From sequence record PQ330092.1: 64,000 nucleotides of DNA, one strand, 5' to 3'. A program made the position numbers and the translations under genes. Below, one piece after another: positions 8,796 through 26,831 of the stretch (the stretch's first letter is position 1; the number at the start of each line of letters is the position of its first letter). The notes under the pieces are model-generated. The model ran no database searches. It saw nothing but the letters and a program-made list of their open reading frames with translations, and was not told the DNA's origin.

Positions 8796-8856
8796 TTGCA
8801 CCGTACTGATAAAAGCGTATAATGTTTTACATCGAGAGCGGGAACACTTCCCGCTA
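8796..8856 (+). promoter_or_regulatory. prototype promoter/stem-loop cassette head (~45 promoters per DTR, many with the hairpin)
   Basis: AAAGTAC-TTGCAC-16-TATAAT-GTTTTAC-ATCGAGA-GCGGGAA-cac-TTCCCGC. Variants at 9256, 9936, 11299, 11554, 13622, 13959, 15544, 15774, 16360, 16795, 19524, 21105, 23650, 23955, 24503, 24839, 25479, 26347 and others (approximate positions). Confidence 0.9.
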
Positions 8857-8878
8857 CACATTAAGAGAGATTAAAACG

Positions 8879-9241
8879 ATGGCGACTCAAATCAATAAAA
8901 TCATGCTTAACCTGGTAAACTTCCGCGAAGAGATGAAAGGTCTTCCGGCTGAAACTGTAAAAATTCACATTGCAGCTTATCGGGAACTTATTGCAATGTT
9001 GCCGCTTAAGCGTGAACAATACGCCGCTACTTTGATGCTTGATTCAATGATCCATATAATGATCTCAAATGATTTAACGATGGTTTATCAGTACATGGGC
9101 GAAAATTTCGCGGTGTGTAGTAAGCCAGTACCAGGGATGGCAACTACTGAGGAATTGCACGGTTTAAATTTAAAGCAAGATGCATGGGATAATATGCCTC
9201 GTTTCCTGGTATGGGCTGACAGTGGCAAAATTTACAAATAA
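8879..9241 (+). CDS. hypothetical early protein
   Basis: Own promoter/hairpin; MATQINK start. Confidence 0.8.
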   Translation: MATQINKIMLNLVNFREEMKGLPAETVKIHIAAYRELIAMLPLKREQYAATLMLDSMIHIMISNDLTMVYQYMGENFAVCSKPVPGMATTEELHGLNLKQDAWDNMPRFLVWADSGKIYK

Positions 9242-9333
9242 GTTTAATAAAGTACTTGCAAACTAAGTTTAAAAGCGTATAATGTTTTACATCAGGTGGG
9301 GAATAGTTCCCCACTATATAAGAGGATTAAAAA

Positions 9334-9573
9334 ATGGCTAAATCAAAAATGTTCTTAGGTCACAAAAACAAAACTCATTGGAATGTAAGCCTTTGGATTA
9401 ATAACGATGAATCATTATACCGGTTGGCCCAGGACTTTATTAACGATAGCACTAATCGCAATGATGCGGCCCGTCATATGATGTTATTTTTAGAACAGAC
9501 TGGACAAGATAAAACACCGGACGGATTCAAATATAGCACTACTGCGATCCGTGCGGCGATGGTTGGAATGTAA
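9334..9573 (+). CDS. conserved phage hypothetical (WNVSLWINNDE...TPDG type)
   Basis: Own promoter, SD GAGGA; motif recalled from phage hypothetical proteins. Confidence 0.8.
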   Translation: MAKSKMFLGHKNKTHWNVSLWINNDESLYRLAQDFINDSTNRNDAARHMMLFLEQTGQDKTPDGFKYSTTAIRAAMVGM

Positions 9574-9661
9574 TAGAATAGAATTTATTTAAAGTACTAT
9601 TGCACGCTGATAGTACTTTATAATAGTGTTTTATTCATACACCAACGATAAGGGCAACAGC

Positions 9662-9928
9662 ATGAATATTAAGTATTTTGCGACGCGTGAACAAGCTCGG
9701 ATCGCCGCACGCCAGGACGGGGCAACGTTTAAAGATATGGGCGTACAATCGGAACGTGGTAAACGTTGGGCCATTGTAAAGCGTAGTACCGCCAGATCAT
9801 TACAGTACTGGTTAGCGGCCTTAAAAAGTCCCGATAGTGTATCGCGTCGAGTGGTAGAAATAAAGCTCGACCGAAAGGGCAACCGCGTGACCGTGTACCG
9901 TACTAAAAAGATTGCAGTACTTGAATAA
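9662..9928 (+). CDS. hypothetical basic protein; paralogue of 21607
   Basis: ATRExAR...FKDMG...RWA...RKGNRVTVY shared. Confidence 0.8.
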   Translation: MNIKYFATREQARIAARQDGATFKDMGVQSERGKRWAIVKRSTARSLQYWLAALKSPDSVSRRVVEIKLDRKGNRVTVYRTKKIAVLE

Positions 9929-10015
9929 AAAGTACTTGCAAACTATGTTTAAAGGCGTATAATGTTTTACATCGAGAGCGGGAACTCTTCCCGCCTATAA
10001 CCTGGAGTAATAAAA

Positions 10016-10246
10016 ATGACTAATATGTATATGACTGAAGTTAAAACCGTAAAAGATACTACCACGAATAAAACTACTTACTTACAGCGGATCTGTGGTG
10101 TATGGCAACGTATCAGCAAATCAAAGTACTTTAAATTAACATCATATGCCAATCGTTCGGATTCATTCAGTACTGAAATAAAAGGTAATAAAGTACACCA
10201 ATACGGCACTTATTATTATTATAGCCTGGACGCGATTGTAGTATAA
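10016..10246 (+). CDS. hypothetical early protein
   Basis: Own promoter/hairpin, SD GGAG. Confidence 0.8.
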   Translation: MTNMYMTEVKTVKDTTTNKTTYLQRICGVWQRISKSKYFKLTSYANRSDSFSTEIKGNKVHQYGTYYYYSLDAIVV

Positions 10247-10278
10247 GTAGTTTACAAATCTTTACAATTGCCAGTATT

Positions 10279-10450
10279 GACTTATTTTGTCAGTACTGGC
10301 ATAATGTATTCATTGGCAGATAAGCCGTAGCCCATAGGGTGCGGAAGTGTATCTATAGAAAAAGTAGTTTAGTACAGTTACAATTGTGCACCCGGTGGGT
10401 TAGCTGTTGTCATGGGGTATATTATACCAGTACTGGATAGTGCTGTCAAT
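10279..10450. promoter_or_regulatory. convergent pair of ORF-less promoter units with CCC-Ann-GGGTGC motifs
   Basis: + TTGACT-17-CATAAT leads to AGCCCATAGGGTGC (10329); minus TTGACA..TATAAT leads to AACCCACCGGGTGC (10388-10401). Confidence 0.7.
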
Positions 10451-10531
10451 ACTTTTTTTTTACTATTCAGTACTGAAAACTATTTTTAAAAAGTACTTGC
10501 AAACTATGTTTAAAGGCGTATAATGTTTTAC

Positions 10532-10606
10532 ATCAGGACGGGGAACGAAATAAGTAACTTCCCGTTAAGTAGCCCAGGAGTAAGGCACACGAAAAACTCC
10601 CCTGAT
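10532..10606 (+). ncRNA. candidate pseudoknot ncRNA, copy A
   Basis: Own promoter, no ORF. ATCAGG/CCTGAT closing stem; core TAAGTAGCCCAGGAGTAAGGCACACGAAAAACTCC. Confidence 0.7.
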
Positions 10607-10674
10607 AAAATAGTTTGACAAATGTTTTTAAAAGCGTATAATACTTACATCAACTACTGAATGAGGGTTACAAA

Positions 10675-11286
10675 ATGAAAACTATCACTACTACTACTTT
10701 CGTTATGGATTTTTCTGAATTGAACGCAGAACAAAAAACGTCAGCTATCGAACTGGTTCGGGAACGTGAAAAAAACTCAAACGACAATTATTTTTCTGAA
10801 AGTGAAATTGAATACTATAAAGAAACAGTACTACCGGAATATGGCATTAATGACGCTGAAATACAATTCAGTGGTTTTTGGTCCCAGGGTGACGGTGCAT
10901 CAATCAGTACTGACCACGTTGACGCAGTGAAGTTTTTACGCAAGGTAAGAGCATTAACTAAGTATCGCTCAATCCGTCACCTGCTGAATGAAGATGATTT
11001 GGCGATGAGTGTAAAGCGTTCGCACTCCCACTACTCGCATGAGAATACTGTAAGCGGGTACATTGAATCGGCTTACACTGATTTAACCGCAAAACAAGAA
11101 ACGTTAGTTAATGAGCTTGAGGAATTACTCACTGAAACTATTCGTGAATTGTCACGCAAGTTGTACCGTGATTTAGAGAATGCATATGAGGATCAATTCA
11201 CTACTGAAAACATTACGGCACTGATTGAGGGTAACGAGTATCAATTCAATGTTATTGATGGCGTAGTGGAATCAATCGAATATTAA
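10675..11286 (+). CDS. conserved phage hypothetical, acidic (FSGFWSQGDGAS motif)
   Basis: 203-aa ORF; own promoter TTGACA-16-TATAAT. Confidence 0.85.
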   Translation: MKTITTTTFVMDFSELNAEQKTSAIELVREREKNSNDNYFSESEIEYYKETVLPEYGINDAEIQFSGFWSQGDGASISTDHVDAVKFLRKVRALTKYRSIRHLLNEDDLAMSVKRSHSHYSHENTVSGYIESAYTDLTAKQETLVNELEELLTETIRELSRKLYRDLENAYEDQFTTENITALIEGNEYQFNVIDGVVESIEY

Positions 11287-11378
11287 TTTAAAAAGTACTT
11301 GCAAACTAAGTTTAAAAGCGTATAATACTTTATATCGAGAGCGGGAATAGTTCCCGCTACTAATGAGGAATACTACAA

Positions 11379-11543
11379 ATGAATACTTTTACCTTCGCTC
11401 AATTGAACGCCCTGGATGTATTGTCTGATGCTTTGCGGGATGCAACTGAAAGCGGTTTATTTGACAATGTTGACATTCACCCTGATGTAATTAATAATTT
11501 TTGTGATGCTATCGCAGAAGTACTGGAAGATCTAAAAAAATAA
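11379..11543 (+). CDS. hypothetical 54-aa acidic protein (below ORF-track cutoff)
   Basis: Own promoter/hairpin, SD GAGGA; MNTFTFAQLNALDVLSDAL. Confidence 0.75.
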   Translation: MNTFTFAQLNALDVLSDALRDATESGLFDNVDIHPDVINNFCDAIAEVLEDLKK

Positions 11544-11631
11544 TAGAAAGTACTTGCAATTAGTTTTTAGTACTGTATAATAGTTTACATAGAGGGGAGA
11601 AATGGTTCTCCCTGGTAATGAGGAAAATAAA

Positions 11632-11853
11632 ATGGCAAATATCACTACTCTTTCCCAACTGGAAGCACTGGTTAAATCTATGCGGGAACATGCCGACAAA
11701 ATCGGCGTACAAGATCCAGCCGTTTGCTTCTGCGACGAATTGAATGATGATACCCTGGTAATAGCAGAAGTCCAGGACGTTTCTAACTATTCCTCGCGTT
11801 ACACTGGCGGCGTAGCAAATAAAGGTGACTTCTGTTTATACCTTACAAAATAA
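11632..11853 (+). CDS. hypothetical early protein
   Basis: MANITT start after SD GAGGA. Confidence 0.8.
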   Translation: MANITTLSQLEALVKSMREHADKIGVQDPAVCFCDELNDDTLVIAEVQDVSNYSSRYTGGVANKGDFCLYLTK

Positions 11854-11919
11854 CAACGCGGGGAGATAATAACTCCCCGTTACTTTTTCAGTACTGAATC
11901 ATTTAATAGACGGATCTCG

Positions 11920-11990
11920 GCACCCGGTGGGTTAGTGACTGTTTCGTCTTGATGTAGTAATTATGCCAGTACTGGATGCACTTGTCAACA
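11920..11990 (-). promoter_or_regulatory. minus-strand ORF-less unit with AACCCACCGGGTGC
   Basis: Reverse complement TTGACA-17-CATAAT...CATCAAGACGAAACAGTCACTAACCCACCGGGTGC, near-identical to the + unit at 17893. Confidence 0.7.
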
Positions 11991-12095
11991 ACTATTTTTC
12001 AAATACTTTTTATTAAAATACTTGCTAATAGTTTTTAAACGCGTATAATGTTTTGCATAGGGGAGCGGTTCCCCTGGTAACTAAGGAATAAGAAA

Positions 12096-12332
12096 ATGCT
12101 TGAACAAATCAAATCAACGTCTGCTAATGTAACGGGAACGGTATCACACTTTATTGGTGATGAATCGCGGGGCGTTCCCTATTGTGCTGTACATGTAAAC
12201 ACTGAGGGTAACTACTGGTTTACGGTTTACGGATCATATTCATTTGGACGGCCAGGGCATCAAAAAATTCTGGATAAAGTACAGCCAACGGGTAAAAATA
12301 TCACGGCTGAAATGTTTTATAAAAAATCATAA
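12096..12332 (+). CDS. hypothetical early protein
   Basis: Own promoter/hairpin, SD AAGGA. Confidence 0.8.
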   Translation: MLEQIKSTSANVTGTVSHFIGDESRGVPYCAVHVNTEGNYWFTVYGSYSFGRPGHQKILDKVQPTGKNITAEMFYKKS

Positions 12333-12416
12333 AGTACTTGATAATAGTTTTTAGTACTGTATAATATTTTACATAGCACGGGGGAGCGGTTCCCCCTGGT
12401 AACTAAGGATAATCAA

Positions 12417-12716
12417 ATGAAAATTGCAATCATCGCCCTGGCTTTATCTGTTTCCTCTTTCGCTGTTAATGCGTCGTTAGATGTGAGTAGTGAAAAATTC
12501 ATTCAGTGCACTGTTGCGATGACCAATGAAAGTACGGGCGAGATTGTTTTAAAGGATTTAGAGATCCAGCCACAAGCATTTAAAAACGGGCCGTTCCATG
12601 AAGAAGACGAAAACGGTAGCACAACCATTTATTATGATGCAAGTACTAAGCGTGGATCGGTCACGGTTATGGATACAGAGAAAGTAACGCACACAGGAGT
12701 AATTAACTGTTTATAA
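12417..12716 (+). CDS. putative exported protein (signal peptide)
   Basis: MKIAIIALALSVSSFAVNA: basic-hydrophobic-AxA. Confidence 0.7.
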   Translation: MKIAIIALALSVSSFAVNASLDVSSEKFIQCTVAMTNESTGEIVLKDLEIQPQAFKNGPFHEEDENGSTTIYYDASTKRGSVTVMDTEKVTHTGVINCL

Positions 12717-12733
12717 TCTAGTACTGAATCACT

Positions 12734-12760
12734 AGCCCACCTTAAACAGTGGGCTTTTTT
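12734..12760 (+). terminator. rho-independent terminator
   Basis: AGCCCAC-cttaaaca-GTGGGCT-TTTTT; part of a 43-bp repeat. Confidence 0.85.
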
Positions 12761-12839
12761 GTTTTGTAGTACTGCATACTTTAAAAATAGTTTTAAAAAA
12801 GTAGTTGACATTACCACAAAAAGGCGTAGAATGTATTAC

Positions 12840-12901
12840 ATCAAGACGGGGAGCACTAAGTAGACCGCCAGTAAGTCGAACGAAAAACTGGACACGTCGA
12901 T
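12840..12901 (+). ncRNA. candidate pseudoknot RNA, copy C (leader of H-NS-like gene)
   Basis: Core TAAGTAGACCGCCAGTAAGTCGAACGAAAAACTGG with compensatory changes vs copies A/B. Confidence 0.65.
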
Positions 12902-12955
12902 AAAACTTTGATACACTAATAAACGTAAACTAAACTTTAATTGAGGATTTATAAA

Positions 12956-13438
12956 ATGGCTAATGTAAAATCATTCCTGAAAGCACTGATTTCAAACGAT
13001 ACTGTTATTGCTGCTGAATTGCTGGCTGAACTGGATAACGATACAATGAAAGCGGTACGCAACAATTTTAACATTGCGTACAGTGAAGCTAAAGAACTGC
13101 AAGCCAAAAAGGTAGCAGAACTGGAAGAACAGAAAAAAGCCCGTGAAGCAGAACTACAAGCAACAATCGAAAGTATCCAGGCGGCAGTAGTTGGATTGGA
13201 TCTGGAAGTGGTTGTAGAAATGGCACATAAAGCCCTGGCGGTTAAGTACGGTGAAGATAAGCCGGAATCTAAGCCTAAAAAATGGATTCAGGAACGCGTA
13301 GCGGTAGTACTGGACAACGGGGAAGAATATCTTATTCCGGTGCGTGGTAACTGCATTGCGGTAGTACTGGACGCTATCAAAGAAAGCGGTATGACTCGCG
13401 AGGAATGGATCGAAGCTCATCGCAAAGTTGAAGCATAA
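12956..13438 (+). CDS. H-NS-like protein (coiled coil + degenerate DNA-binding domain)
   Basis: C-terminus LDNGEEYLIPVRGNCIAVVLDAIKESGMTREEWI aligns by eye with E. coli H-NS [35 protein letters not shown]; central coiled coil. Confidence 0.55.
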   Translation: MANVKSFLKALISNDTVIAAELLAELDNDTMKAVRNNFNIAYSEAKELQAKKVAELEEQKKAREAELQATIESIQAAVVGLDLEVVVEMAHKALAVKYGEDKPESKPKKWIQERVAVVLDNGEEYLIPVRGNCIAVVLDAIKESGMTREEWIEAHRKVEA

Positions 13439-13459
13439 CAATTAAAGTACTGAATCACT

Positions 13460-13486
13460 AGCCCACCTTAAACAGTGGGCTTTTTT
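13460..13486 (+). terminator. rho-independent terminator (identical to 12734)
   Basis: Same hairpin + T-run. Confidence 0.85.
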
Positions 13487-13505
13487 GTGTCTGTAGTATT
13501 CCAGT

Positions 13506-13575
13506 CCACCAGCACCGCCTAGAATCGATTCTAACGCATTAAACTGATTATCTGATACATCGCCCTAGCTGGTGG
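13506..13575. other. Chi sites 13506-13513(-) and 13568-13575(+) around 14-bp palindrome TAGAATCGATTCTA
   Basis: Seen directly; intergenic. Confidence 0.75.
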
Positions 13576-13723
13576 CGTTAAGGTCGTTAGAATGCGATTG
13601 AGAGCGTTTAAAGTATTTTGCAAAAAGTAATAAAAAGTACTTGCACGATAAAGAGATTAGCGTATAATGTTTTACATCGAGAGGGGGAAACGGTTCTCCT
13701 TCCAAATCAAAGGAATCAAAACA

Positions 13724-13951
13724 ATGGCTATTATCATTACTCGCGTATCTGGTACTACTGGCAACGAACAAGTAGTTGCAGTCATTACTAACAAGGCAGG
13801 TGCGGAATTGCAAAATGCAATGAATACCTGGGCCGTTAATGAGTTCGGTCAGTGGGCAAGTGTAGCATACATTGAAACCTATCAAGTGCCGTCGATTAGT
13901 TTAACTGATTTGGGCGTTGAGCGTATCCTTTGCCTGGATGAATTAAATTAA
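13724..13951 (+). CDS. hypothetical early protein
   Basis: MAIIITRV start after SD AAGGA. Confidence 0.8.
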   Translation: MAIIITRVSGTTGNEQVVAVITNKAGAELQNAMNTWAVNEFGQWASVAYIETYQVPSISLTDLGVERILCLDELN

Positions 13952-14036
13952 AAAAGTACTTGCAAAGTAAATCGAATAAAGTATAATACATTACATCAAG
14001 GGGAGAAATGATTCTCCCCACTACAAGGAAACTAAA

Positions 14037-14249
14037 ATGGCTATCATTACTAAAATCAAAGTTAACAAGACTATCGTTAAACTGGCAGAAGTGAAAGAAG
14101 GTTATAAAGTATCTTGGTGCGGTATGTATCGGACGTTCGCAGATATAGATGATGCGATCAATTATTACAGTGACACGGTTAAAAACTTTGTTCGTGCTGA
14201 TGTGGTTATGGCAGTGGCAACATATAAAGCAGCGAAAGAAAGTAAGTAA
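14037..14249 (+). CDS. hypothetical early protein; weak similarity to 17173
   Basis: Own promoter/hairpin. Confidence 0.8.
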   Translation: MAIITKIKVNKTIVKLAEVKEGYKVSWCGMYRTFADIDDAINYYSDTVKNFVRADVVMAVATYKAAKESK

Positions 14250-14340
14250 AAATATTATCACAGTACTATTGACATAGTTTGATAGTACTGGCATAATAGA
14301 TTTTATCAAGACGACACATATTAATTTAAGGAATACTAAA

Positions 14341-14664
14341 ATGGCTAAAACTATCATCAACACCGTTTCCCTGGCTGCAATCCATGCAATCAATGTTGAC
14401 GGTAAACGTTGGACTGATTCATATGGCAATACTTATCATTCTTGTCATGTAAGCGTTGAACTGGATAACGGCTTGAATGATCTGGCGGTTGAATCATTTA
14501 CTTATGGCTATGAGGATGCATATCAACAAACGGCGGTATCACTCTTAAAGGAATCAGTAGACGGGCTTGATACTGTTGAAACCTCCCTCTATCGTTTGTG
14601 CAATGATCTTAATATCCCGTTGCATTGTACTGTACAGGATGTAAAACGTAAAAAAGATCTTTAA
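14341..14664 (+). CDS. hypothetical; paralogue of 21188
   Basis: RWTD..GNTYHSC...FTYGY...DVKRKKD shared. Confidence 0.85.
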   Translation: MAKTIINTVSLAAIHAINVDGKRWTDSYGNTYHSCHVSVELDNGLNDLAVESFTYGYEDAYQQTAVSLLKESVDGLDTVETSLYRLCNDLNIPLHCTVQDVKRKKDL

Positions 14665-14744
14665 TTAGCTTTACTTTATGCAGATACTTTGATATAGTGT
14701 CTGCATAGGGGAAAGAAATTAAATCAACTTAAGAGGATAGTAAA

Positions 14745-15014: not shown

Positions 15015-15065
15015 TCAAAACATCGTTAGCGGTCGATTCAGGCCGCTTATATTGGGGATTATACC

Positions 15066-20824: not shown

Positions 20825-21100
20825 ATGCGGATTCTACTGACAGCTAACGAAATCGAGCAAGTACTGACTACTAACCTGGAAGACTGGAAACGTGAAGCAG
20901 ATATCCAGGCGGTTCAATGGCTTAACGATAAGTTAACGCCGGATGACTTAAGCAAGATTGTAGATCCTCAATTCTACGAAGATATCCACGACACCGCGTT
21001 AAGCGTCGAGGATGTACTTGATAAGCATTTTATTGATATTGATTTGCAGGTTTACGGTCGTAAAAACTTTATCACTATTCACGACATTTACAATAATTAA
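20825..21100 (+). CDS. hypothetical acidic protein
   Basis: Own promoter, SD AAGGA. Confidence 0.8.
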   Translation: MRILLTANEIEQVLTTNLEDWKREADIQAVQWLNDKLTPDDLSKIVDPQFYEDIHDTALSVEDVLDKHFIDIDLQVYGRKNFITIHDIYNN

Positions 21101-21187
21101 GTATTGACAAAGTATCTTAGTACTGTATAATAGTTTACATCAAGCGAGGGGAATGGTTCCCCTCCTAACAAAGAGAGAGAAATAAAA

Positions 21188-21511
21188 ATGACTATGATCC
21201 TTACCCAGAAAGTAGAACTGAAAATTGTAACCTCCTTTGACATTAAAGTTAATCGCTGGACTGATCGGAACGGTAACACTTACCACTCTTGCTACGTGTC
21301 CGCGTTAATTGGCGACCGCTGGGAAGACCTGGGACATGAAACCTTTACTTACGGTTACGGTACACAAGGCGAATACACGGGCTTGGAGATCATTAAAGAA
21401 ACCGTTATAGGTTTCAACCCGAAAGAAAAAGTTATTCACCGCATCGAGGAAGAGATCAACAAAGAAATAACAGTTCGCTACCACGATGTAAAACGTAAGA
21501 AAGACATGTAA
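21188..21511 (+). CDS. hypothetical; paralogue of 14341
   Basis: RWTDRNGNTYHSC...FTYGY...DVKRKKDM. Confidence 0.85.
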   Translation: MTMILTQKVELKIVTSFDIKVNRWTDRNGNTYHSCYVSALIGDRWEDLGHETFTYGYGTQGEYTGLEIIKETVIGFNPKEKVIHRIEEEINKEITVRYHDVKRKKDM

Positions 21512-21606
21512 TAGAATCCATTTAAAGTACTATTTGACATTGCCCAGATAGTACTTTATAATAGACTCTAACTTGTAGTACTAACTTAACTAATAGGATG
21601 TATACC

Positions 21607-22002
21607 ATGATTACTAAATTCTACGCTACCCGTGAAGCTGCCCGTATTGTTGCACGCGAGGAAGGCGAAACATTTAAAGACATGGGCAAAGATGCACCGA
21701 AAGGTCAACGCTGGGCCGTACAGTTCAAAGAGATCTCTGATATTGTGAATTCACCGGAGCCAGTACTAACAGCAGCAGAACTAAAACGAGCGGATTTACT
21801 GGCGTCAATACTTGATGCACAAGATGAGTTTATCGCTGATTCTGATATCAAAGTACAGACAAACCATACCGCATGGACTCACGCGGATCACCTGGCAAAC
21901 CTTAAGCGTCCAAGTGAACTGATTCGCAACCAGAAAGAGATCCGACACGACCGTAAGGGTAATCGTGTAACAGTATACAGTAAACGCCGCCAGGTTATCT
22001 AA
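21607..22002 (+). CDS. hypothetical; paralogue of 9662 with a longer middle
   Basis: ATREAAR...FKDMG...DRKGNRVTVY. Confidence 0.8.
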   Translation: MITKFYATREAARIVAREEGETFKDMGKDAPKGQRWAVQFKEISDIVNSPEPVLTAAELKRADLLASILDAQDEFIADSDIKVQTNHTAWTHADHLANLKRPSELIRNQKEIRHDRKGNRVTVYSKRRQVI

Positions 22003-22063
22003 TAACTTGCAGTACTAACAACACGGCGGGATCAGTTCCCGCCTTTTTTATAGGACAAACAAA

Positions 22064-22318
22064 ATGATTAAGGTTCAACTATATAAAGATAACATCTTAC
22101 GGGTACACTATAAAGCACCTCAGAGAATCATCACAAAGGCCGTACAGCTTGCTAATGAGTTTATTAATGGTAACCTATTACCTAGGAAGTTAAGCAACGG
22201 GAAACTGCGTGTAATCGATGTAGACACTAACAACAGAATAGTAATAGAGAACACAGGAAAGATAAACCTTTATGAGCATCAACAATACAATAAGAAAATA
22301 AAACTAATATCACGTTGA
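22064..22318 (+). CDS. hypothetical basic protein
   Basis: SD AGGA. Confidence 0.75.
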   Translation: MIKVQLYKDNILRVHYKAPQRIITKAVQLANEFINGNLLPRKLSNGKLRVIDVDTNNRIVIENTGKINLYEHQQYNKKIKLISR

Positions 22319-22371
22319 CAGTACTCAATTGTTTTAGTACTATGTACACATACCAACACGGGAGAAACAAA

Positions 22372-22590
22372 ATGAAATTATCTAAAATCGAAAAGAAAAC
22401 TATTGATGAAGCAGTTAAGCACGGTTATACCTTTCGTAATGATTCACATTTTACCAATTTTCAACAAGGGTATCGTACTATTAAAAAACTAATTGACAAA
22501 GGTTTATTAGTTGAAGTCAATAACGGTAACGGTATCGAGTATCAACCAACACAAGACGCATTTTATTTTAAGAAATATAATATTATCTAA
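22372..22590 (+). CDS. hypothetical, possible winged-helix
   Basis: YRTIKKLIDKGLLVEV resembles a wHTH recognition helix/wing; weak. Confidence 0.6.
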   Translation: MKLSKIEKKTIDEAVKHGYTFRNDSHFTNFQQGYRTIKKLIDKGLLVEVNNGNGIEYQPTQDAFYFKKYNII

Positions 22591-22648
22591 TTGACAGTAC
22601 TCAAATGTTTTAGTACTATATGTACATACCAACACGGGGAAAAACAAA

Positions 22649-22891
22649 ATGATTACTTTAGAAAAACGTATCAAAGAAACTACATCGCTGGTGGAATTGT
22701 TAACAGTACTGAAATGTAAAACTACTCGGTTTAGTACACCGGACTTTATTAATATGGTTGATGTTAACGGTCGTTATCGTATTGCAGTAGAACAAGGCAC
22801 GGCAAAAGTATTCAGTACTAAAAACACTAAGGAAGTGATTCACGCGGTTAGTGTAAAAAAAGTAGTTGCCATTGATAGTAAAGTACTGTAA
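22649..22891 (+). CDS. hypothetical early protein (contains Chi 22687-22694)
   Basis: Own promoter. Confidence 0.75.
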   Translation: MITLEKRIKETTSLVELLTVLKCKTTRFSTPDFINMVDVNGRYRIAVEQGTAKVFSTKNTKEVIHAVSVKKVVAIDSKVL

Positions 22892-22922
22892 TATAGTTTC
22901 ATTAACTCAAGGAGAACATGCA

Positions 22923-23507
22923 ATGCGTAATTATACTAAATTCATCCGTACACTGTCAGAAATGGAAACCAACAAAGAGATCCTTTCAGCTTGTCGGTTA
23001 GCTGGTCTGGAGATCATCGGGGCAGGTTCTTCCCGTATAGTTTTCGCTTTAAATGATCGGTTAGTGATCAAGGTCGCGAATTGTGATGCGGGTGTAGAAC
23101 AAAATGAAACAGAATGTAGGGTATGGAATTTTTTAGACTATGACCGCCCTCAGTTGAAACAGTTCTTCGCTAAAGTGCATATGCATTTAAGCGATCCTGA
23201 TAATATGTTTATTGTTATGGATCGGTTGAGTACTGCAAGTAAAGGCAGTGTAAAGCACGTTAACGCGTGCAATGAATTAAAGTACAATATTAAACGTAAT
23301 GCCATTGAACGCCAGCACCGCTTTGCTGATGCACTACAACACGTTGATGATACATTATCAACACTAACGATAAGAGATATCAGAAAACAGAATATCGGCC
23401 AGGATCGCAACGGCCTTATTAAAGTACTTGATTACGGTTTAACCCGCAATATCTGGAATCAGTACTATAAAAAGCGTGATGTAAAAGCCGTAACTATAAC
23501 ACGATAA
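22923..23507 (+). CDS. protein kinase-like (phage Ser/Thr kinase, T7 gp0.7-type fold)
   Basis: Gly loop IGAGSSRIVF, VIK lysine, helix-C E (QNETE), catalytic DIRKQN, DYG; SD AAGGAG. Confidence 0.8.
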   Translation: MRNYTKFIRTLSEMETNKEILSACRLAGLEIIGAGSSRIVFALNDRLVIKVANCDAGVEQNETECRVWNFLDYDRPQLKQFFAKVHMHLSDPDNMFIVMDRLSTASKGSVKHVNACNELKYNIKRNAIERQHRFADALQHVDDTLSTLTIRDIRKQNIGQDRNGLIKVLDYGLTRNIWNQYYKKRDVKAVTITR

Positions 23508-23519
23508 AAAAAGATTAAA

Positions 23520-23608
23520 AAAGGGATTGACTCCGGTCAGTCCCTTTGCTATTATATATTCATTGAGAGATAACTCACTGACCCATAGGGTGCGGAAGTG
23601 TATCTATT
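23520..23608 (+). promoter_or_regulatory. terminator-promoter fusion and CCC-ATA-GGGTGC unit (23580-23593)
   Basis: Same block as 20250 and 25780. Confidence 0.75.
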
Positions 23609-23729
23609 ATATAAGTATTCAGTACTGAAAACTATTTGATAAAAAGTACTTGCATTGTACTTAGAATCAAGTATAATGTTTTATATCGAGAGGGGGAAAC
23701 GGTTCTCCCTGGCAATAAGGAATAAAATC

Positions 23730-23951
23730 ATGACTACAATGACTTGCATTTACGCTTCCAATCTTCTGAATGATGCGGCCTTTAATGTTGATTCAGAATA
23801 TCAATGTTATCGGGATGAAAATAAAAAAGTTTTTGTAGTTGATAATAATGGTTTCCATATTGAATTACAATCCGGCTTCACTGGTGTTGATGGTAAATCA
23901 GTATGGGGCGTACAGGATGATAAAGGCACATATCATTTTAAACGTAATTAA
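23730..23951 (+). CDS. hypothetical early protein
   Basis: MTTMTC after SD AAGGA. Confidence 0.8.
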   Translation: MTTMTCIYASNLLNDAAFNVDSEYQCYRDENKKVFVVDNNGFHIELQSGFTGVDGKSVWGVQDDKGTYHFKRN

Positions 23952-24035
23952 GTATTGACAAAGTATATTAGTACTGTATAATAGTTTACATCAAGGGGAG
24001 AATAGTTCTCCCCGATACTAAAAGGAAACAAAATT

Positions 24036-24308
24036 ATGTCCAGCTACTCCGCTACTATGATCATTAAAGATATGAACGGTAATCCTACTTCTGCTGGTGG
24101 ATCATTTGGAAACATTAATTTAGATGGTCGGTTATCCATGCAATCAGCCATCGATGCAGCGAAAGAAGTTTTTAAGAATGAATGTACTGTTAGTAAGCTG
24201 GATTATATGGGATTCGCTATCGAAAAAACTAATCGTTTTGTGAACTACAAAAAACCATTGATGATTGATACTAACCTGAAAGCTAACGAAGTGGAGTACT
24301 TATTATGA
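24036..24308 (+). CDS. hypothetical early protein (contains Chi 24093-24100)
   Basis: Own promoter/hairpin. Confidence 0.8.
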   Translation: MSSYSATMIIKDMNGNPTSAGGSFGNINLDGRLSMQSAIDAAKEVFKNECTVSKLDYMGFAIEKTNRFVNYKKPLMIDTNLKANEVEYLL

Positions 24309-24496
24309 CAGTTGAAGAAGTTAAAAAAGTACTGGCAGTACTACGCTATCATAATCATTGCAAGGTGAAGAATGATCCTGATTATCTCGATTCATCCCTG
24401 GAAGAGGATACACTACAAGCAATAAGCCATATGCAAAAAATGCTTAAGCGTATGACTGAAAAGAATAGACCGGACTATATCGGAAATAAAATTTAA
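24305..24496 (+). CDS. hypothetical
   Basis: SD GGAG, ATGA overlap. Confidence 0.75.
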   Translation: MTVEEVKKVLAVLRYHNHCKVKNDPDYLDSSLEEDTLQAISHMQKMLKRMTEKNRPDYIGNKI

Positions 24497-24582
24497 AAAG
24501 TACTTGCATTGTAGTTAGATTAACGTATAATGTTTTACATAGAGCGGGGGAATAGTTCTCCCGCCAGTCCAGGAGATACACC

Positions 24583-24846
24583 ATGAACACTATCGAAATC
24601 ACTATCAATGCACACGTATACGACAACGTAGTACTGCAAACTACTATGACCGCTAATGATACCAGTACTTTGCGGAATACTGTTATTAGTGCCGTATGTG
24701 CTGCAATCGGTGATGTCGCCCTGGAAAATGCAAAACACGTAAACGATGGTTTCACTATGTGCAAACGTGATAACGCAAAACATATCATCGTAGAAGGTTA
24801 CGGCGGTGTAGAATATAATGTTTATATGAAAAAAGTACTTGCATAA
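24583..24846 (+). CDS. hypothetical early protein
   Basis: Own promoter/hairpin, SD AGGAG. Confidence 0.8.
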   Translation: MNTIEITINAHVYDNVVLQTTMTANDTSTLRNTVISAVCAAIGDVALENAKHVNDGFTMCKRDNAKHIIVEGYGGVEYNVYMKKVLA

Positions 24847-24913
24847 TAACTAAAACAAAGTATAATGTTTTGCATAGGGGGAGATATCCTCCCCCACTAA
24901 AAGGAGTAATAAA

Positions 24914-25138
24914 ATGGCTAACTTTGATGAACTGATGCGGGAAGTAGCTAACCTGGCAGAAGAGAAGAAATCATTCGATTCTATCTATAACACCGCTCAC
25001 CGTGATTCAGTACTGGCATGTAACCAGGATCAAAAAGATGAACTAATCGCCACCTATCATGAAGCATGGAAGTACTACCGACAATGGGAGAAAGAAGAAA
25101 GAGAGTCTACCATTGACGGCCTCAATAATCTAATCTAA
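24914..25138 (+). CDS. hypothetical helical protein
   Basis: Own promoter/hairpin, SD AAGGAG. Confidence 0.8.
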   Translation: MANFDELMREVANLAEEKKSFDSIYNTAHRDSVLACNQDQKDELIATYHEAWKYYRQWEKEERESTIDGLNNLI

Positions 25139-25214
25139 AAGTTTTATTTCAGTACTATTGACATAGCTTGATAGTACTGATGTAATAACTTTACTAACTA
25201 CAAGGGGAAACATA

Positions 25215-25472
25215 ATGGAACAGTTCACACAATATCGGGTAAATCCTCAAGCGATGGCCTACGTAGAAGACCATAAAACGTTACCAGTACTAACACCAAT
25301 TAAAGGCCATATCTATCGTGCAATGTCGTGGTGTACGGCCCAGGATGGCTATAAAACCGTAGCCGTTGGTATGTATTGCGGTAATGGTGAATGGTTTGAT
25401 CCAAATAATCCGGTAGCCATTGACAGTACTGAAAAAATGAAATGGGCCGACTACATCGAAGATATTTCATAA
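25215..25472 (+). CDS. hypothetical early protein
   Basis: Own promoter. Confidence 0.8.
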   Translation: MEQFTQYRVNPQAMAYVEDHKTLPVLTPIKGHIYRAMSWCTAQDGYKTVAVGMYCGNGEWFDPNNPVAIDSTEKMKWADYIEDIS

Positions 25473-25561
25473 AACTATTTGACAGTACTAACCAGTAATG
25501 TATAATGTTTTACATAGAGCGGGGGAATAGTTCTCCCGCCAATAGTTTGGAGTAAAATATT

Positions 25562-25762
25562 ATGTCTATCGCTCTCGCCCTGGTTGAAGTACTGAAAGAA
25601 GCTAAAGCCAACCTTATCGATGTACAGATTAAGGAATTGCAAAACGGCTTAATCGGCTGTACTTGTACCGCTGGCGGTGCGGCAGACTATCGAGAACACG
25701 AATCACTCGAATCACTGGTTCGGTATCTTACCATGATCGTTGATGATTGGAGAATCATCTAA
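25562..25762 (+). CDS. hypothetical early protein
   Basis: Own promoter/hairpin, SD GGAG. Confidence 0.8.
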   Translation: MSIALALVEVLKEAKANLIDVQIKELQNGLIGCTCTAGGAADYREHESLESLVRYLTMIVDDWRII

Positions 25763-25779
25763 CAAAAAAGAATAAAAAA

Positions 25780-25900
25780 AGGGATTGACTCCGGTCAGTC
25801 CCTTTGCTATTATATACGCATAGACAAAAACTAGCCCACAGGGTGCATAGGTGTATCTAAAATATATAGTTAATAACGGTGAGTAACTATCTGCTGGTGG
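25780..25900 (+). promoter_or_regulatory. terminator-promoter fusion, CCC-ACA-GGGTGC unit (25833-25846) and Chi (25893-25900)
   Basis: Same block as 20250 and 23520. Confidence 0.75.
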
Positions 25901-26007
25901 AACTAAAACTATTAATAAAAAAGTATTGACAAAGTATATCAGTACTGCGATAATGTATCTCGTAGGGCGGCAATGGTGCGACGGCCCACAAAGTTAGGAG
26001 CTTCAAA

Positions 26008-26340
26008 ATGACTACTTCAATCGCTATCGTTAAAGCTTTCATCCGTACCAATGTTTCTTCTGTATTCATCGACGGTATGGATCGGGAAGTAGAATACTCA
26101 ATCATTATCGCACAGACTGCAAACGGTGCTCGGTATATCCTTAATGATAGTGAAGCAAATCACTACTACTTCACTAAAGCCACTGGCTTTAAACGCATCG
26201 ATGCTGATGTAGTATACGCTAAGATGAATAAGCTGGTAGACAAGATTAACGCTAAAGGCACTATTGATTTACAGTACTGGACCGAAACCGATCCAGAATA
26301 TGGATCTCACCGCTACCTGAATCCAGGAATTAAAATGTAA
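26008..26340 (+). CDS. hypothetical early protein
   Basis: SD AGGAG. Confidence 0.8.
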   Translation: MTTSIAIVKAFIRTNVSSVFIDGMDREVEYSIIIAQTANGARYILNDSEANHYYFTKATGFKRIDADVVYAKMNKLVDKINAKGTIDLQYWTETDPEYGSHRYLNPGIKM

Positions 26341-26429
26341 AAAGTACTTGCATAGTACTTAGATTCATGTATAATGTTTTACATAGAGAGGGGGAAATGG
26401 TTCTCCCTCCTAAATTAAGGAGTTTTATC

Positions 26430-26831
26430 ATGACCTTCTCAATCACTTCCTTCGCTGACGTTTTAGTACTGGCTCGGACTTTTGGTAAAGATGCACTGGA
26501 GTACGCTGTAAGTAATGGCACTATCCAACCGGAACAGTGCCGCATCATTGGAAACTGCAAACGTTGGGCGGTATCCAATACTATTGCACTGGAAAACTTC
26601 CACGATGGCAACAATGAATATTCTGTTGATGTAGTATTCGAAGCCGTTGATCTCGGCGGTATCTATAATACTAACCTGAATGATGTGCGTATCGTTCGCA
26701 CGGGGTTCGGTGCTTATGATGTATCTATTCGTGAAGCTATGAACACCGGATACATTAGCAAGGACTTACTTGCTCACATCATGCAGCTGTGTACGGAACG
26801 TAACGAAGCACGCACAATCTTAGGACTGTAA
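26430..26831 (+). CDS. hypothetical early protein
   Basis: MTFSITSF after SD AAGGAG. Confidence 0.8.
   Translation: MTFSITSFADVLVLARTFGKDALEYAVSNGTIQPEQCRIIGNCKRWAVSNTIALENFHDGNNEYSVDVVFEAVDLGGIYNTNLNDVRIVRTGFGAYDVSIREAMNTGYISKDLLAHIMQLCTERNEARTILGL

What the first reader, a model, noticed from the sequence alone, without database searches (positions are those of the whole stretch)
8796..26430. One promoter + 5' stem-loop + one gene cassette architecture, ~45 near-consensus promoters in 20 kb
Seen: repeated AAAGTAC-TTG(C/A)(A/C)-16/17-TATAAT-GTTTTAC-AT(C/A), often followed by a G-run/C-run hairpin (e.g. GCGGGAA-nnn-TTCCCGC, GGGGAGAA-atga-TTCTCCCC), then SD and a single small ORF. Almost all face rightwards and many have 16-bp spacers. 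Established: similar promoter-stem-loop cassettes (PeSL) were proposed to drive modular gene shuffling in T4-type phages, and host RNAP pulls T7 DNA into the cell. Inference: this works at once as an integron-like shuffling platform, a sink titrating sigma70-RNAP from host genes, and possibly a transcription-powered DNA entry motor.
Basis: partly seen in the sequence, partly recalled or inferred. Interest (0 to 1): 0.7.

Follow-up and report, generated by a model that had tools for sequence, protein, structure and literature searches.

The report
Promoter-cassette array in phage terminal repeat
The stretch is the 20-kb terminal repeat of a giant E. coli phage, filled with about 50 tiny genes, most with their own near-perfect host-type promoter and leader hairpin: a known style of phage early "host-takeover" module, and the repeated promoter heads are also where single genes are gained and lost.

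Summary
Window 7148-27261 holds 36 gene-proximal sigma70-type promoters plus 6 promoters of small non-coding units, almost all rightward, against about 6 expected per strand. Of the 36, 29 have 16-bp spacers and 29 have TATAAT. A G-run/C-run hairpin starts about 12 nt after the -10 in 22 of them.

This unit is the long direct terminal repeat (DTR) of an Asteriusvirus jumbo coliphage (JP4/PBECO4/121Q type). Its ends match, to the base, the DTR of relatives, one of them mapped by PhageTerm and restriction digestion. The window carries the DTR twice in tandem (second copy 27262-47375), most likely a record artefact.

Best reading: an immediate-early, host-RNA-polymerase-driven takeover module. 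It resembles the SPO1 terminal-redundancy module and the T5 pre-early repeat, and is built from PeSL-type promoter/stem-loop heads.

Six relatives are collinear but differ by 21 mostly whole-cassette indels or replacements whose ends fall in the heads. An unrelated Vequintavirinae phage shares heads and gene bodies in a different order. So modular turnover is supported, but by homology between heads, not integron-like: no integrase, and cassettes carry their own promoters.

The sigma70-sink and DNA-entry-motor ideas are untested, and a whole-genome entry motor is kinetically implausible.

The parts
7148..27261 (+). Long direct terminal repeat (DTR), copy 1, 20,114 bp; contains the whole promoter-cassette array
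   Evidence: Exact tandem repeat with 27262-47375. The first bases equal base 1 of fEgEco12, vB_Ec-M-J and E9.1, and the last bases equal the last base of the 20,993-bp DTR of fEgEco12 and of the annotated 21,525-bp DTR of vB_Ec-M-J. fEgEco12 termini were mapped by PhageTerm plus restriction digests (PMC13070987).
27262..47375 (+). DTR copy 2, identical to copy 1; the 27261|27262 junction joins the right and left virion ends
   Evidence: The same tandem layout is in record PQ330092 (JP4). Interpreted as a record/assembly representation, not shown to exist physically.
7148..8790 (+). ORF-poor terminal leader of the DTR. It has a 12/12 consensus promoter at 7513-7540 (366 nt from the end), small non-coding units and many CAGTACTG palindromes
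   Evidence: The same promoter sits at position 366 of fEgEco12.
8796..27109 (+). Array of about 50 small ORFs (44-203 aa) with 36 gene-proximal sigma70-type heads
   Evidence: 43 of 50 ORF products match PHROG families.
13941..14039 (+). Typical class A head: A-tract + AGTAC, -35 TTGCAA 13960-13965, 16-bp spacer, -10 TATAAT 13982-13987, leader hairpin 14000-14019 (GGGGAGAA/TTCTCCCC), SD, ATG 14037
   Evidence: This 91-nt head is found 10-28 times per Asteriusvirus record. It also occurs in Vequintavirinae-type phages and other Rak2-like genera.
16795..16879 (+). Typical class B head: perfect TTGACA, spacer ending in AGTACTG, TATAAT, hairpin, SD, ATG 16877
16231..16330 (+). Class C unit: a 12-bp hairpin that contains the -35 (terminator-like plus promoter TTGACT-17-TATTAT), then a short non-coding transcript with the box CCCAYNGGGTGC. 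Further + copies have -35 hexamers at 10277, 17894, 20258, 23527, 25785
   Evidence: No ORF. No Rfam match.
10358..10454 (-). Minus-strand copy of the same box unit (12/12 promoter with TGn extended -10), convergent with the + unit at 10277. Other minus copies have boxes at 8237, 8452, 11920
11858..11880 (+). Intrinsic-terminator-like site. Others lie at 8400, 12734, 13460, 22025 and in the class C hairpins at 16231, 20251, 23520, 25778. About 9 in all, dividing the array into multi-promoter blocks
18496..18917 (+). Example of a head-to-head cassette indel: the acetyltransferase cassette is absent in G17 and slurp01, which carry one hybrid head instead
18221..18478 (+). DksA/TraR-type C4 zinc-finger protein (85 aa)
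   Evidence: phrog_54 at 2e-18. NF008243 at 2e-22, below the curated cut-off.
18543..18899 (+). Small GNAT-type acetyltransferase (118 aa)
   Evidence: weak matches
22923..23507 (+). Minimal protein-kinase-like protein (194 aa)
   Evidence: All 68 weak PDB sequence matches are kinases. Invariant G-x-G-S-S, V-I-K, E, D-x-x-x-x-N and D-Y-G motifs in 12 homologues. The model's best fold matches are all kinase-like folds, with probability 0.9-1.0 but E about 2e-3 and TM 0.3-0.4.

Best explanation
Window 7148-27261, repeated at 27262-47375, is the ~20.1-kb long direct terminal repeat of an Asteriusvirus (Rak2-like) jumbo coliphage. It carries the phage's immediate-early gene set.

How it most likely works:
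- About 50 small genes of mostly unknown function are transcribed by the host sigma70 RNA polymerase straight after DNA entry. The named ones are a DksA/TraR-type zinc finger, a GNAT acetyltransferase and a minimal kinase-like protein.
- 36 of the genes have their own head: an UP-like A-tract, AGTAC, -35 TTGCAA/TTGACA, a 16-17 bp spacer, TATAAT, and a conserved AT-rich start region GTTTTACAT.
- Many parallel promoters would let all genes fire within the first minute from a single DNA copy, without waiting for a polymerase to cross 20 kb (inferred).
- In 22 heads a G-run/C-run hairpin sits about 5 nt from the predicted 5' end of the mRNA. It has no U-tract. It most likely protects the short mRNAs from 5'-end-dependent decay, or serves as a common protein-binding handle, rather than terminating transcription (inferred).
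- The heads are ~100-bp near-repeats spaced about every 400 bp, sharing up to 48 nt of exact identity. They are therefore substrates for homologous recombination, which adds, deletes and swaps single cassettes. This is the PeSL mechanism described for T4-type phages, and it makes the DTR a hyperplastic region.

Shown: the anatomy, the DTR identity, promoter enrichment and strand bias, head-bounded indels, and cross-family sharing.
Inferred: early timing, host-takeover role, hairpin function, and the recombination mechanism.
For: DTR identity:
- Exact 20,114-bp tandem repeat.
- Both boundaries equal, to the base, those of relatives with mapped or annotated DTRs.

Promoters:
- 40 (+) against 8 (-) near-consensus sites, null about 6 per strand.
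- In the complete genome of relative fEgEco12, TTGMMN-16/17-TATAAT occurs 98 times forward and 4 reverse. 31 lie in each DTR and 36 in the 333-kb unique part, about 13.6 times denser in the DTR.
- The DTR flanks are back-to-back polycistronic small ORFs without their own promoters.

Heads and hairpins. No T-run follows the hairpins, and none is listed as a + strand terminator.

Genes: 43 of 50 ORF products match PHROG families, almost all of unknown function. The kinase-like protein.

Turnover:
- 6 relatives are collinear, with 21 events, mostly of 213-495 bp.
- 28 of 41 distinct block ends lie in heads that make up 23.6% of the sequence (binomial p = 2e-9). Many events have 45-108 nt of overlapping head homology.
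- The junction of the acetyltransferase cassette is a hybrid head.
- 17 head pairs share at least 25 nt of exact identity, maximum 48.

Spread:
- The same heads and several gene bodies (82-88% nt identity) occur in a different order in Vequintavirinae phage W70.
- The head occurs in other Rak2-like genera.
- Klebsiella phage fENko-Kae01, a different genus cluster, has the same grammar in its PhageTerm-defined 19.7-kb DTR.

Precedents:
- PeSLs (PMC2839356, PMC4122927).
- The SPO1 host-takeover module in the 12.4-kb terminal region, with strong promoters and ribosome-binding sites (PMC6873191).
- T5 pre-early genes in the terminal repeat (10.1101/866236).
- RpoD-like promoters with UP elements in the early region and terminal repeat of the Rak2-like phage CBB (PMC5259590).
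Against: - No transcript data exist for this phage group in what I could reach. Promoter activity, early timing and 5' ends are predictions.
- Only 3 of 50 proteins carry any functional hint, so 'host takeover' rests on analogy.
- The breakpoint enrichment is measured against a uniform null. Because nearly all intergenic sequence is head, selection for intact genes alone would also push surviving breakpoints into heads.
- If the start site is 7 nt after the -10, the hairpin begins after about 5 unpaired nt. That is at the edge of what is known to stabilise E. coli mRNAs (own knowledge).
- In RB49, a PeSL stem-loop reduced downstream reporter expression as much as a very strong terminator (rrnB T1).
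Confidence: 0.7

Rival explanations
1. Integron-like platform: cassettes are captured and reordered by site-specific recombination at the stem-loops.
For: Hairpins recur at every cassette head. Cassettes appear in a different order in W70. Wastewater contigs show joints between non-adjacent heads.
Against: A whole relative genome has no match to the integron integrase model at E <= 0.001. Every cassette has its own promoter, the opposite of promoterless integron cassettes. Stems are short, perfect 6-9 bp G/C stems, not attC-like. Order is collinear in 6 relatives, and indels carry 45-108 nt of homology on both sides. Contig joints at repeats can be assembly artefacts.
Confidence: 0.04
2. RNA-polymerase sink: the array mainly titrates sigma70 holoenzyme away from host promoters.
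For: About 42 near-consensus promoters per DTR, so about 84 per virion genome, with UP-like A-tracts.
Against: No measurement exists. The promoters precede conserved, translatable genes with strong SD sequences (43 of 50 in PHROG families), so expression is the simpler purpose. One infecting genome adds few promoters compared with the host's own; titration would matter only after replication, when early promoters are usually shut off (own knowledge).
Confidence: 0.12
3. Entry device: the DTR is the first DNA to enter. Either rightward transcription pulls it in (T7-like), or entry pauses after the DTR until its products act (T5-like two-step transfer).
For: The array lies at the physical end of the genome. 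All gene heads point inward from the left end. A 12/12 promoter sits 366 nt from the end. The DTR is 5.4% of the genome, against 7.9% for the T5 first-step segment. T7 needs transcription for full entry.
Against: This is a contractile-tail myovirus. Which end enters first is unknown, and the identical right-end copy would transcribe outward. At host-polymerase speed, 20 kb needs about 7-8 min and about 350 kb needs about 2 h (own knowledge), while latent periods are 60 min or 10 min. No A1/A2-like annotation appears among the 50 proteins.
Confidence: 0.1
4. The stem-loops are transcription attenuators or terminators that insulate cassettes from upstream read-through, as originally proposed for PeSLs, rather than mRNA 5' protectors.
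For: In RB49 a PeSL stem-loop lowered downstream lacZ expression as much as rrnB T1. Most cassettes here lack a separate terminator. Class C units do combine a hairpin plus T-rich tail with a promoter.
Against: In class A and B heads the hairpin lies downstream of the cassette's own predicted start site, so an efficient terminator would silence its own gene. No U-tract follows it. The strict G-rich 5' arm and C-rich 3' arm argue for a strand-specific (RNA-level) role, but do not tell the two roles apart.
Confidence: 0.2
5. Heads are similar only because all need to be strong promoters. Breakpoints fall there because only indels that keep genes intact survive, not because heads are recombination substrates.
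For: Nearly all intergenic DNA is head, so the uniform null overstates the enrichment. Some events end at stop codons or inside genes (12709/12733, 14348/14593, 15196, 19166).
Against: Similarity goes beyond the functional hexamers: spacers, start region and hairpins are shared, with exact words up to 48 nt. Many indels show the same head aligned at both sides (overlaps of 45-108 nt). One junction is a hybrid head.
Confidence: 0.2

Closest known systems
PeSL (promoter-early stem-loop) cassettes of T4-type phages (Arbiol, Comeau, Krisch 2010; Comeau et al. 2014)
   Same: A sigma70-consensus early promoter. An AT-rich upstream part holding the previous gene's stop codon. A GGGG..CCCC stem-loop, then SD and ATG of a small ORFan. 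Dense in a hyperplastic region. Indels and replacements between close relatives end in the motifs.
   Different: Here the commonest stem-loop position is inside the transcribed leader, about +6 to +25. In phi1/RB49 it lies mostly between or over the -35 and -10, or before the start site. Only the class C units here match that layout. The array fills a 20-kb terminal repeat of a Rak2-like jumbo phage instead of internal regions of a circularly permuted T4-type genome. Terminator activity and mini-circles are untested.
[quoted passage not shown]
   Same: Tens of small early genes with strong host-type promoters and ribosome-binding sites, inside a long terminal repeat (12.4 kb, 26 genes).
   Different: No sequence relationship was found. 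SPO1 genes are grouped in operons rather than mostly one promoter per gene. No leader hairpin family or head-mediated cassette turnover is mentioned in the one SPO1 paper I read (PMC6873191). Functions of the genes here are unknown.
T5 pre-early genes / first-step-transfer segment in the ~10-kb terminal repeat
   Same: Host-polymerase-transcribed first genes sit in a long DTR at the genome end. The DTR also contains a repeat- and palindrome-rich untranslated part.
   Different: There is no evidence here for two-step entry, an injection stop signal, DnaA-box arrays or A1/A2 homologues. This is a myovirus, not a siphovirus.
Early region of the Rak2-like phage vB_PcaM_CBB
   Same: RpoD-like promoters with UP-like elements in front of short hypothetical genes. 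Three of 18 predicted promoters lie on its 22.5-kb terminal repeat.
   Different: Only 18 such promoters were reported genome-wide, with no stem-loop or cassette-turnover analysis. Here there are about 42 in the DTR alone.
Integrons
   Same: Arrays of single-gene cassettes separated by hairpin-forming sites; variable cassette content.
   Different: No integrase and no attC-type sites. Cassettes carry their own promoters. Turnover is consistent with homologous recombination.

Membership tests
PeSL cassettes (T4-type phages) | [quoted passage not shown] | tested here: met
PeSL cassettes (T4-type phages) | Stable stem-loop, often polyG then polyC, within the motif (five described positions, from upstream of the -35 to just before the start site) | tested here: met
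   22 of 36 heads have a G-run/C-run stem. However, the usual position is after the predicted start site, which is not one of the five described. Class C units have the stem over the -35.
PeSL cassettes (T4-type phages) | Motif spans from the stop codon of the upstream small gene to the SD/ATG of the next, in a gene-variable region | tested here: met
   In 21 of 35 heads the -35 begins no more than 22 nt after the preceding stop. Gene content varies among relatives.
PeSL cassettes (T4-type phages) | Insertions, deletions and replacements between close relatives have their ends in the motifs | tested here: met
   28 of 41 distinct block ends lie in heads; head overlaps of 45-108 nt; a hybrid head. 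The null used was uniform, so selection is not excluded.
PeSL cassettes (T4-type phages) | Stem-loop acts as a terminator/attenuator; promoter is very strong in vivo; recombination yields mini-circles | not testable with these tools
   Needs reporter assays and inverse PCR
Terminal-repeat early / host-takeover module (SPO1, T5 type) | Lies within a long direct terminal repeat of a linear virion genome | tested here: met
   Boundaries are identical to the mapped DTR of a relative; not mapped for this phage itself.
Terminal-repeat early / host-takeover module (SPO1, T5 type) | Small genes with strong host-sigma promoters and strong ribosome-binding sites | tested here: met
Terminal-repeat early / host-takeover module (SPO1, T5 type) | Expressed first after infection; products shut off or redirect host functions | not testable with these tools
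   No usable transcript data. Only DksA/TraR-like, GNAT and kinase-like hints.
Integron | IntI-type tyrosine recombinase | tested here: not met
   No match at E <= 0.001 to TIGR02249 in the complete genome of relative fEgEco12
Integron | Promoterless cassettes expressed from a common promoter, each bounded by an attC site | tested here: not met
   36 cassette-own promoters. Stems are short and perfect, not attC-like.
T7-type transcription-driven genome entry | Strong host promoters close to the leading end and pointing inward | tested here: inconclusive
   A 12/12 promoter lies 366 nt from the left end and all heads point rightward. The leading end is unknown, and the right-end copy points outward.
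T7-type transcription-driven genome entry | Entry blocked by rifampicin; entry rate equals polymerase rate | not testable with these tools
   Needs infection experiments. Timing argues against whole-genome entry by this route.

The most novel reading that the evidence does not exclude
The terminal repeat may be a dedicated entry-and-takeover control unit shared by Rak2-like jumbo phages, made of three parts:
1. It is the first DNA exposed in the cell, possibly with staged entry as in T5.
2. Its ~10 promoter-driven non-coding units with the invariant box CCCAYNGGGTGC are a new class of phage regulatory RNA or protein-loading site. The box is conserved between genera whose genomes share only about 29% nucleotide identity.
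3. The palindrome CAGTACTG is the operator of a global phage regulator that switches the early array off. It is 65-fold over-represented genome-wide, densest in the DTR, and placed at fixed positions beside the -35 or -10.

None of this is excluded by my data, and none is shown.
Probability: 0.1. Interest if true: 0.75.

Novelty: new member of a known kind. Interest (0 to 1): 0.4.

Why it matters
- It places the least understood ~50 genes of a therapeutically studied group of jumbo coliphages into a defined class: terminal-repeat, host-polymerase, immediate-early genes. It also gives each one a predicted promoter and 5' end, so they can be tested one by one for host-takeover or anti-defence activity.
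- It extends the PeSL idea (regulatory heads that double as recombination linkers) from T4-type phages to Rak2-like jumbo phages and Vequintavirinae. These appear to exchange the same cassettes.
- It flags that records such as JP4 carry the terminal repeat as an internal tandem duplication, which inflates gene counts and can mislead comparative work.
- The heads are compact, very strong, naturally insulated E. coli expression units.

Tried and rejected
- Rfam at gathering and at E <= 1: nothing credible for hairpins or box units.
- RNAalifold on ten box units: only a 4-bp stem and no covariation. Single-sequence folds of 19 units from two genera: weak z-scores. So I do not call them structured RNAs.
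- Public runs: only Logan contigs of wastewater libraries. They give no starts, strands or levels. Joints between heads were seen but may come from other strains or from repeat-induced misassembly.
- My first chaining of BLAST blocks forbade overlaps above 30 nt. It wrongly suggested a 3.4-kb replacement at 20.8-23.9 kb. This was corrected with overlap-tolerant chaining.
- The control (random 100-mers from the right flank) was spoiled by paralogous genes there, so I use only the head-to-head figures.
- NCBIfam gave nothing for 8 of the 10 larger proteins.
- A literature search for Asteriusvirus transcriptomics returned nothing relevant. The papers on JP4, Sharanji, phAPEC6, fEgEco12 and fENko-Kae01 never use the word 'promoter'.
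- An assembly-artefact explanation for the promoter array itself is rejected: the array is present in dozens of independent records.

Full report
WHAT IS THERE

Reading 8700-14700 shows the motif exactly as described: A-rich DNA, AGTAC, TTGCAA or TTGACA, 16-17 bp, TATAAT, GTTTTACAT, then a G-run/C-run hairpin, a Shine-Dalgarno sequence and a small ORF.

A scan for TTG-N3, 16-18 bp, and at least 5/6 of TATAAT lists the sites with their context. In the unit 7148-27261, near-consensus sites (at least 10/12) number 40 on the + strand and 8 on the - strand. A first-order Markov null gives 5.9 +/- 2.5 per strand, maximum 13. Twelve sites are perfect 12/12, eleven of them on the + strand.

Curating the intergenic sites gives 36 heads directly in front of genes and 6 in front of short non-coding units. 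For the 36 gene heads:
- The spacer is 16 bp in 29 and 17 bp in 7.
- The -10 is TATAAT in 29.
- The -35 is TTGACA in 15, TTGCAA in 9 and TTGCAT in 6.
- The column consensus is aaAaAgtac-TTGcaa-16-(G)TATAAT-gttTTacATcaag, with phased A-tracts upstream.
- In 21 of 35 heads the -35 begins no more than 22 nt after the stop codon of the previous gene.

Twenty-two heads have a perfect 6-9 bp stem. It starts 12 +/- 2 nt after the -10 and ends 17-23 nt before the ATG. The 5' arm holds 112 G and 5 C. There are 13 different arm sequences, each matched by its complement.

- There are about 50 ORFs for 36 gene heads, so some genes sit in 2-4-gene groups.
- Only about nine intergenic terminator-like sites exist on the + strand. 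Transcripts from successive promoters should therefore be nested and co-terminal, not one transcript per gene.

A k-mer self-comparison shows that 7148-27261 is repeated exactly, head to tail, at 27262-47375, a unit of 20,114 bp.

The window is 100% identical over this unit to Escherichia phage JP4 (PQ330092), which has the same tandem layout. It is 89-97% identical in pieces to about 40 Asteriusvirus jumbo coliphages such as PBECO4, 121Q, G17, slurp01, fEgEco12 and Sharanji.

The first base of the unit is base 1 of the records of fEgEco12, vB_Ec-M-J and E9.1, and the last base of G17. The last base of the unit is the last base of fEgEco12's 20,993-bp direct terminal repeat and of vB_Ec-M-J's annotated 21,525-bp repeat. 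The fEgEco12 termini were set by PhageTerm and confirmed by restriction digests (PMC13070987). About 20-kb terminal repeats are also reported for G17 (PMC6563267), Sharanji (PMC11895373) and the more distant CBB (PMC5259590).

So the finding lies inside the phage's long direct terminal repeat (DTR). The window shows the right-end copy joined to the left-end copy. This is most likely a consequence of how the record was circularised, although I could not test it.

The array is specific to the DTR:
- In the complete genome of fEgEco12, the pattern TTGMMN-16/17-TATAAT occurs 98 times forward and 4 times reverse (reversed-pattern control: 0 and 2).
- 31 sites lie in each DTR and 36 in the 333-kb unique part, an approximately 13.6-fold higher density in the DTR.
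- The DNA on both sides of the DTR consists of back-to-back, often overlapping ORFs of 60-75 aa without individual promoters.

THE GENES

Of 50 predicted products (44-203 aa), 43 match PHROG families, so they are real, conserved phage genes. Almost all are of unknown function. The exceptions are:
- A DksA/TraR-type C4 zinc finger at 18221-18478.
- A small GNAT acetyltransferase at 18543-18899.
- A 194-aa protein at 22923-23507. All its weak PDB sequence matches are protein kinases. Its 12 homologues keep G-x-G-S-S, V-I-K, E, D-x-x-x-x-N and D-Y-G motifs invariant. Its model (mean pLDDT 70, with a confident N-terminal half) finds only kinase-like folds, at probability 0.9-1.0 but weak E-values and TM-scores.

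A polymerase-channel-type zinc finger, an acetyltransferase and a minimal kinase fit an early host-modifying set. T7's early kinase gp0.7 is the textbook parallel (own knowledge). This remains analogy.

COMPARISON WITH RELATIVES

I fetched the DTRs of six relatives and chained BLAST blocks against the window's DTR. My first chaining forbade overlaps and gave a misleading picture. After finding the error I allowed overlaps.

All six relatives are collinear with the window, with no inversions or transpositions. They differ by 21 distinct events in about 18 kb. Most are the presence or absence of one cassette (213-495 bp) or the replacement of one gene body. Of the 50 genes, 38 are present in all six relatives.

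Of 41 distinct block ends, 28 fall inside heads, which occupy 23.6% of the sequence (binomial p = 2e-9). Several more fall within 12 nt of a head.

In many events the same head aligns to both sides of the indel, with overlaps of 45-108 nt. This is what unequal or ectopic homologous exchange between repeated heads leaves behind. One clear case is the acetyltransferase cassette at 18496-18917. It is absent from G17 and slurp01, which carry one hybrid head: the upstream half comes from one window head and the downstream half from the next.

Heads offer enough homology. Seventeen head pairs share at least 25 nt of exact identity, and ten share at least 30 nt, up to 48 nt.

One caveat: nearly all intergenic DNA is head. 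Selection for intact genes would also concentrate surviving breakpoints there, and I did not separate the two effects.

BEYOND THE GENUS

- A 91-nt head (13950-14040) is found 10-28 times per Asteriusvirus record, 2-3 times in several ~140-kb Vequintavirinae-type phages, and in other Rak2-like genera.
- In Vequintavirinae phage W70, heads of the same type precede small genes. Six gene bodies are 74-88% identical in nucleotides to DTR genes of the window, plus one weaker 68% match. Their order is different: in window coordinates 10474, 13662, 14025, 9321, 16520, 12037, 25554. The homology blocks are bounded by heads.
- Klebsiella phage fENko-Kae01 belongs to a different genus cluster, with about 29% identity to fEgEco12. 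Its PhageTerm-defined 19.7-kb DTR holds 50 genes. It has 50 + strand matches to the same loose promoter scan, the same G-run/C-run leader hairpins, the same hairpin-embedded TTGACT-17-TATTAT units and the same AGTACT excess.

The regulatory grammar is therefore a trait of the Rak2-like clade's terminal repeats, and the cassettes move between phage families.

HOW IT MOST LIKELY WORKS

Shown: the anatomy, the position in the DTR, the enrichment and strand bias, the head-bounded turnover, and the cross-family sharing.

Inferred:
- Host sigma70 polymerase fires at about 40 promoters in parallel as soon as the DTR is in the cell. All takeover genes are then expressed from one DNA copy without a 7-8 min transit across 20 kb.
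- The AT-rich start region and UP-like tracts make the promoters strong.
- The leader hairpin most likely shields the short mRNAs from 5'-end-dependent decay, or is a shared handle for a regulator. It lies about 5 nt from the predicted 5' end and lacks a U-tract.
- The heads double as recombination linkers.

The PeSL papers describe the same elements in phi1/RB49, PST/T4 and nt-1/KVP40, and attribute modular shuffling to them. The main anatomical difference is the stem-loop position. In T4-type phages it lies mostly between or over the hexamers, where it was read as a terminator for upstream transcription. Here that layout is seen only in the class C units.

The closest functional precedents are SPO1's 26-gene host-takeover module in the 12.4-kb terminal region and T5's pre-early genes in the terminal repeat.

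- 'Shuffling platform': supported as head-mediated gain, loss and swap, but not as an integron. A complete relative genome has no match to the integron integrase model. The cassettes have their own promoters. Order within the genus is conserved.
- 'Sigma70 sink': not testable here. The presence of conserved, well-translated genes behind the promoters makes expression the simpler purpose.
- 'Entry motor': the location at the genome end, the inward orientation from the left end and a perfect promoter 366 nt from the end are compatible with it. However, the leading end is unknown, the right-end copy points outward and the phage has a contractile tail. Host polymerase at about 40-50 nt/s (own knowledge) would need about 2 h for about 350 kb, against reported latent periods of 60 min (Sharanji) and 10 min (JP4). 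At most, a role limited to the first 20 kb or a T5-like pause remains open.

TRANSCRIPT EVIDENCE

None is usable. The runs that hold this DNA are wastewater libraries kept as contigs. They cover the region and show joints between non-adjacent heads, for example 11339 to 11547 in two runs, 11601 to 14012, and 14312 back to 14026. They cannot show starts, strands or levels, and repeat-induced misjoins are possible. The genome papers on JP4, Sharanji, phAPEC6, fEgEco12 and fENko-Kae01 never use the word 'promoter'. Only the CBB paper notes RpoD-like promoters, three of them on its terminal repeat.

UNEXPLAINED EXTRAS

1. AGTACT occurs 133 times in the DTR against 6.5 expected. 54 of these are inside genes. 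CAGTACTG occurs 261 times in the fEgEco12 genome against 4 for the reversed control, and is densest in the DTRs. In heads it overlaps the first base of the -35 (class A) or abuts the -10 (class B).
2. Ten units per DTR, on both strands, each have their own promoter and the box CCCAYNGGGTGC about 20-25 nt after the predicted start. Chance expectation is 0.4, and none occur outside the DTR in the window. The box is conserved in fENko-Kae01, but I found no Rfam match, no covariation and no convincing fold.

VERDICT

This is a real, strongly non-random architecture, correctly recognised as PeSL-like. It is best explained as the immediate-early cassette array of a jumbo phage's terminal repeat, with head-mediated modular turnover. 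It is a new member of known kinds (PeSL regions; terminal-repeat takeover modules), not a new kind of system. Interest is moderate.

Noticed in passing
window 7148-27261 and 27262-47375 (junction 27261|27262): The 20,114-bp terminal repeat is written twice in tandem inside the sequence, as in record PQ330092 (JP4). This looks like the right and left virion ends joined by circularising the full linear genome. It duplicates about 50 genes in the annotation.
   Followed up: partly
window 1-47375, densest in 7148-27261; whole genome of PP777464 (L002): The palindrome AGTACT occurs 133 times in the DTR against 6.5 expected, 54 of them inside genes. CAGTACTG occurs 261 times in a relative's genome against 4 for the reversed control. 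It sits at fixed places beside the -35 or -10 of the heads. It is also enriched in Klebsiella phage fENko-Kae01's DTR (124 in 22 kb) but not in Vequintavirinae phage W70. Function unknown.
   Followed up: partly
boxes at window 8237(-), 8452(-), 10331(+), 10388(-), 11920(-), 16293(+), 17951(+), 20308(+), 23582(+), 25835(+): About ten small promoter-driven non-coding units per DTR carry the invariant box CCCAYNGGGTGC. Several have their -35 inside a 12-bp terminator-like hairpin, and two pairs are convergent. The box is conserved in another genus. No Rfam match, no covariation, weak folding.
   Followed up: partly
window 22923-23507 (+): A 194-aa protein with all catalytic motifs of a protein kinase and kinase-like fold matches. 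A 'putative protein kinase' is also annotated in the DTR of fENko-Kae01. It may be an early host-modifying kinase, by analogy with T7 gp0.7.
   Followed up: yes
window 10497-10614, 20378-20493, 12805-12955 (+): Three class A-type promoters are followed not by a gene but by a ~95-120-nt leader with a longer imperfect hairpin. In two cases a second (class B) promoter follows before the gene. The 10474-10653 segment is 83% identical in Vequintavirinae phage W70.
   Followed up: no
window 7513-7640 (+): A perfect 12/12 promoter lies 366 nt from the physical left end. It drives a structured non-coding stretch (about -14 kcal/mol hairpin) followed by two CCTCC motifs. It is conserved at the same position in fEgEco12.
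   Followed up: no
window 2093-6884 and 47473-~54000 (+): Both flanks of the DTR are long runs of back-to-back, often overlapping ORFs of about 60-75 aa without their own promoters. They are probably paralogue arrays, and their architecture contrasts sharply with the DTR.
   Followed up: partly
window 14341-14664 and 21188-21511; 9662-9928 and 21607-22002: Paralogous cassettes occur within the DTR (both pairs hit the same PHROG: phrog_6246 and phrog_8127). This is consistent with duplication by head-to-head exchange.
   Followed up: no
window 8796-14795, wastewater runs X2-X4, X9: Contigs from wastewater libraries join non-adjacent heads (for example 11339>11547, 11601>14012, 14312>14026, 11357>9272). 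They are either natural cassette variants or misjoins at repeats.
   Followed up: partly
window 12417-12716 (+): A 99-aa protein with an N-terminal signal-peptide-like segment. Its homologue in fEgEco12 is annotated 'protein spackle' (a T4 superinfection-exclusion protein). PHROG gives only a family of unknown function.
   Followed up: no
   Followed up: no
literature: PMC12648861 vs PMC11895373: The reported latent period is 10 min for JP4 and 60 min for the related Sharanji, a large discrepancy for ~350-kb phages of one genus.
   Followed up: no
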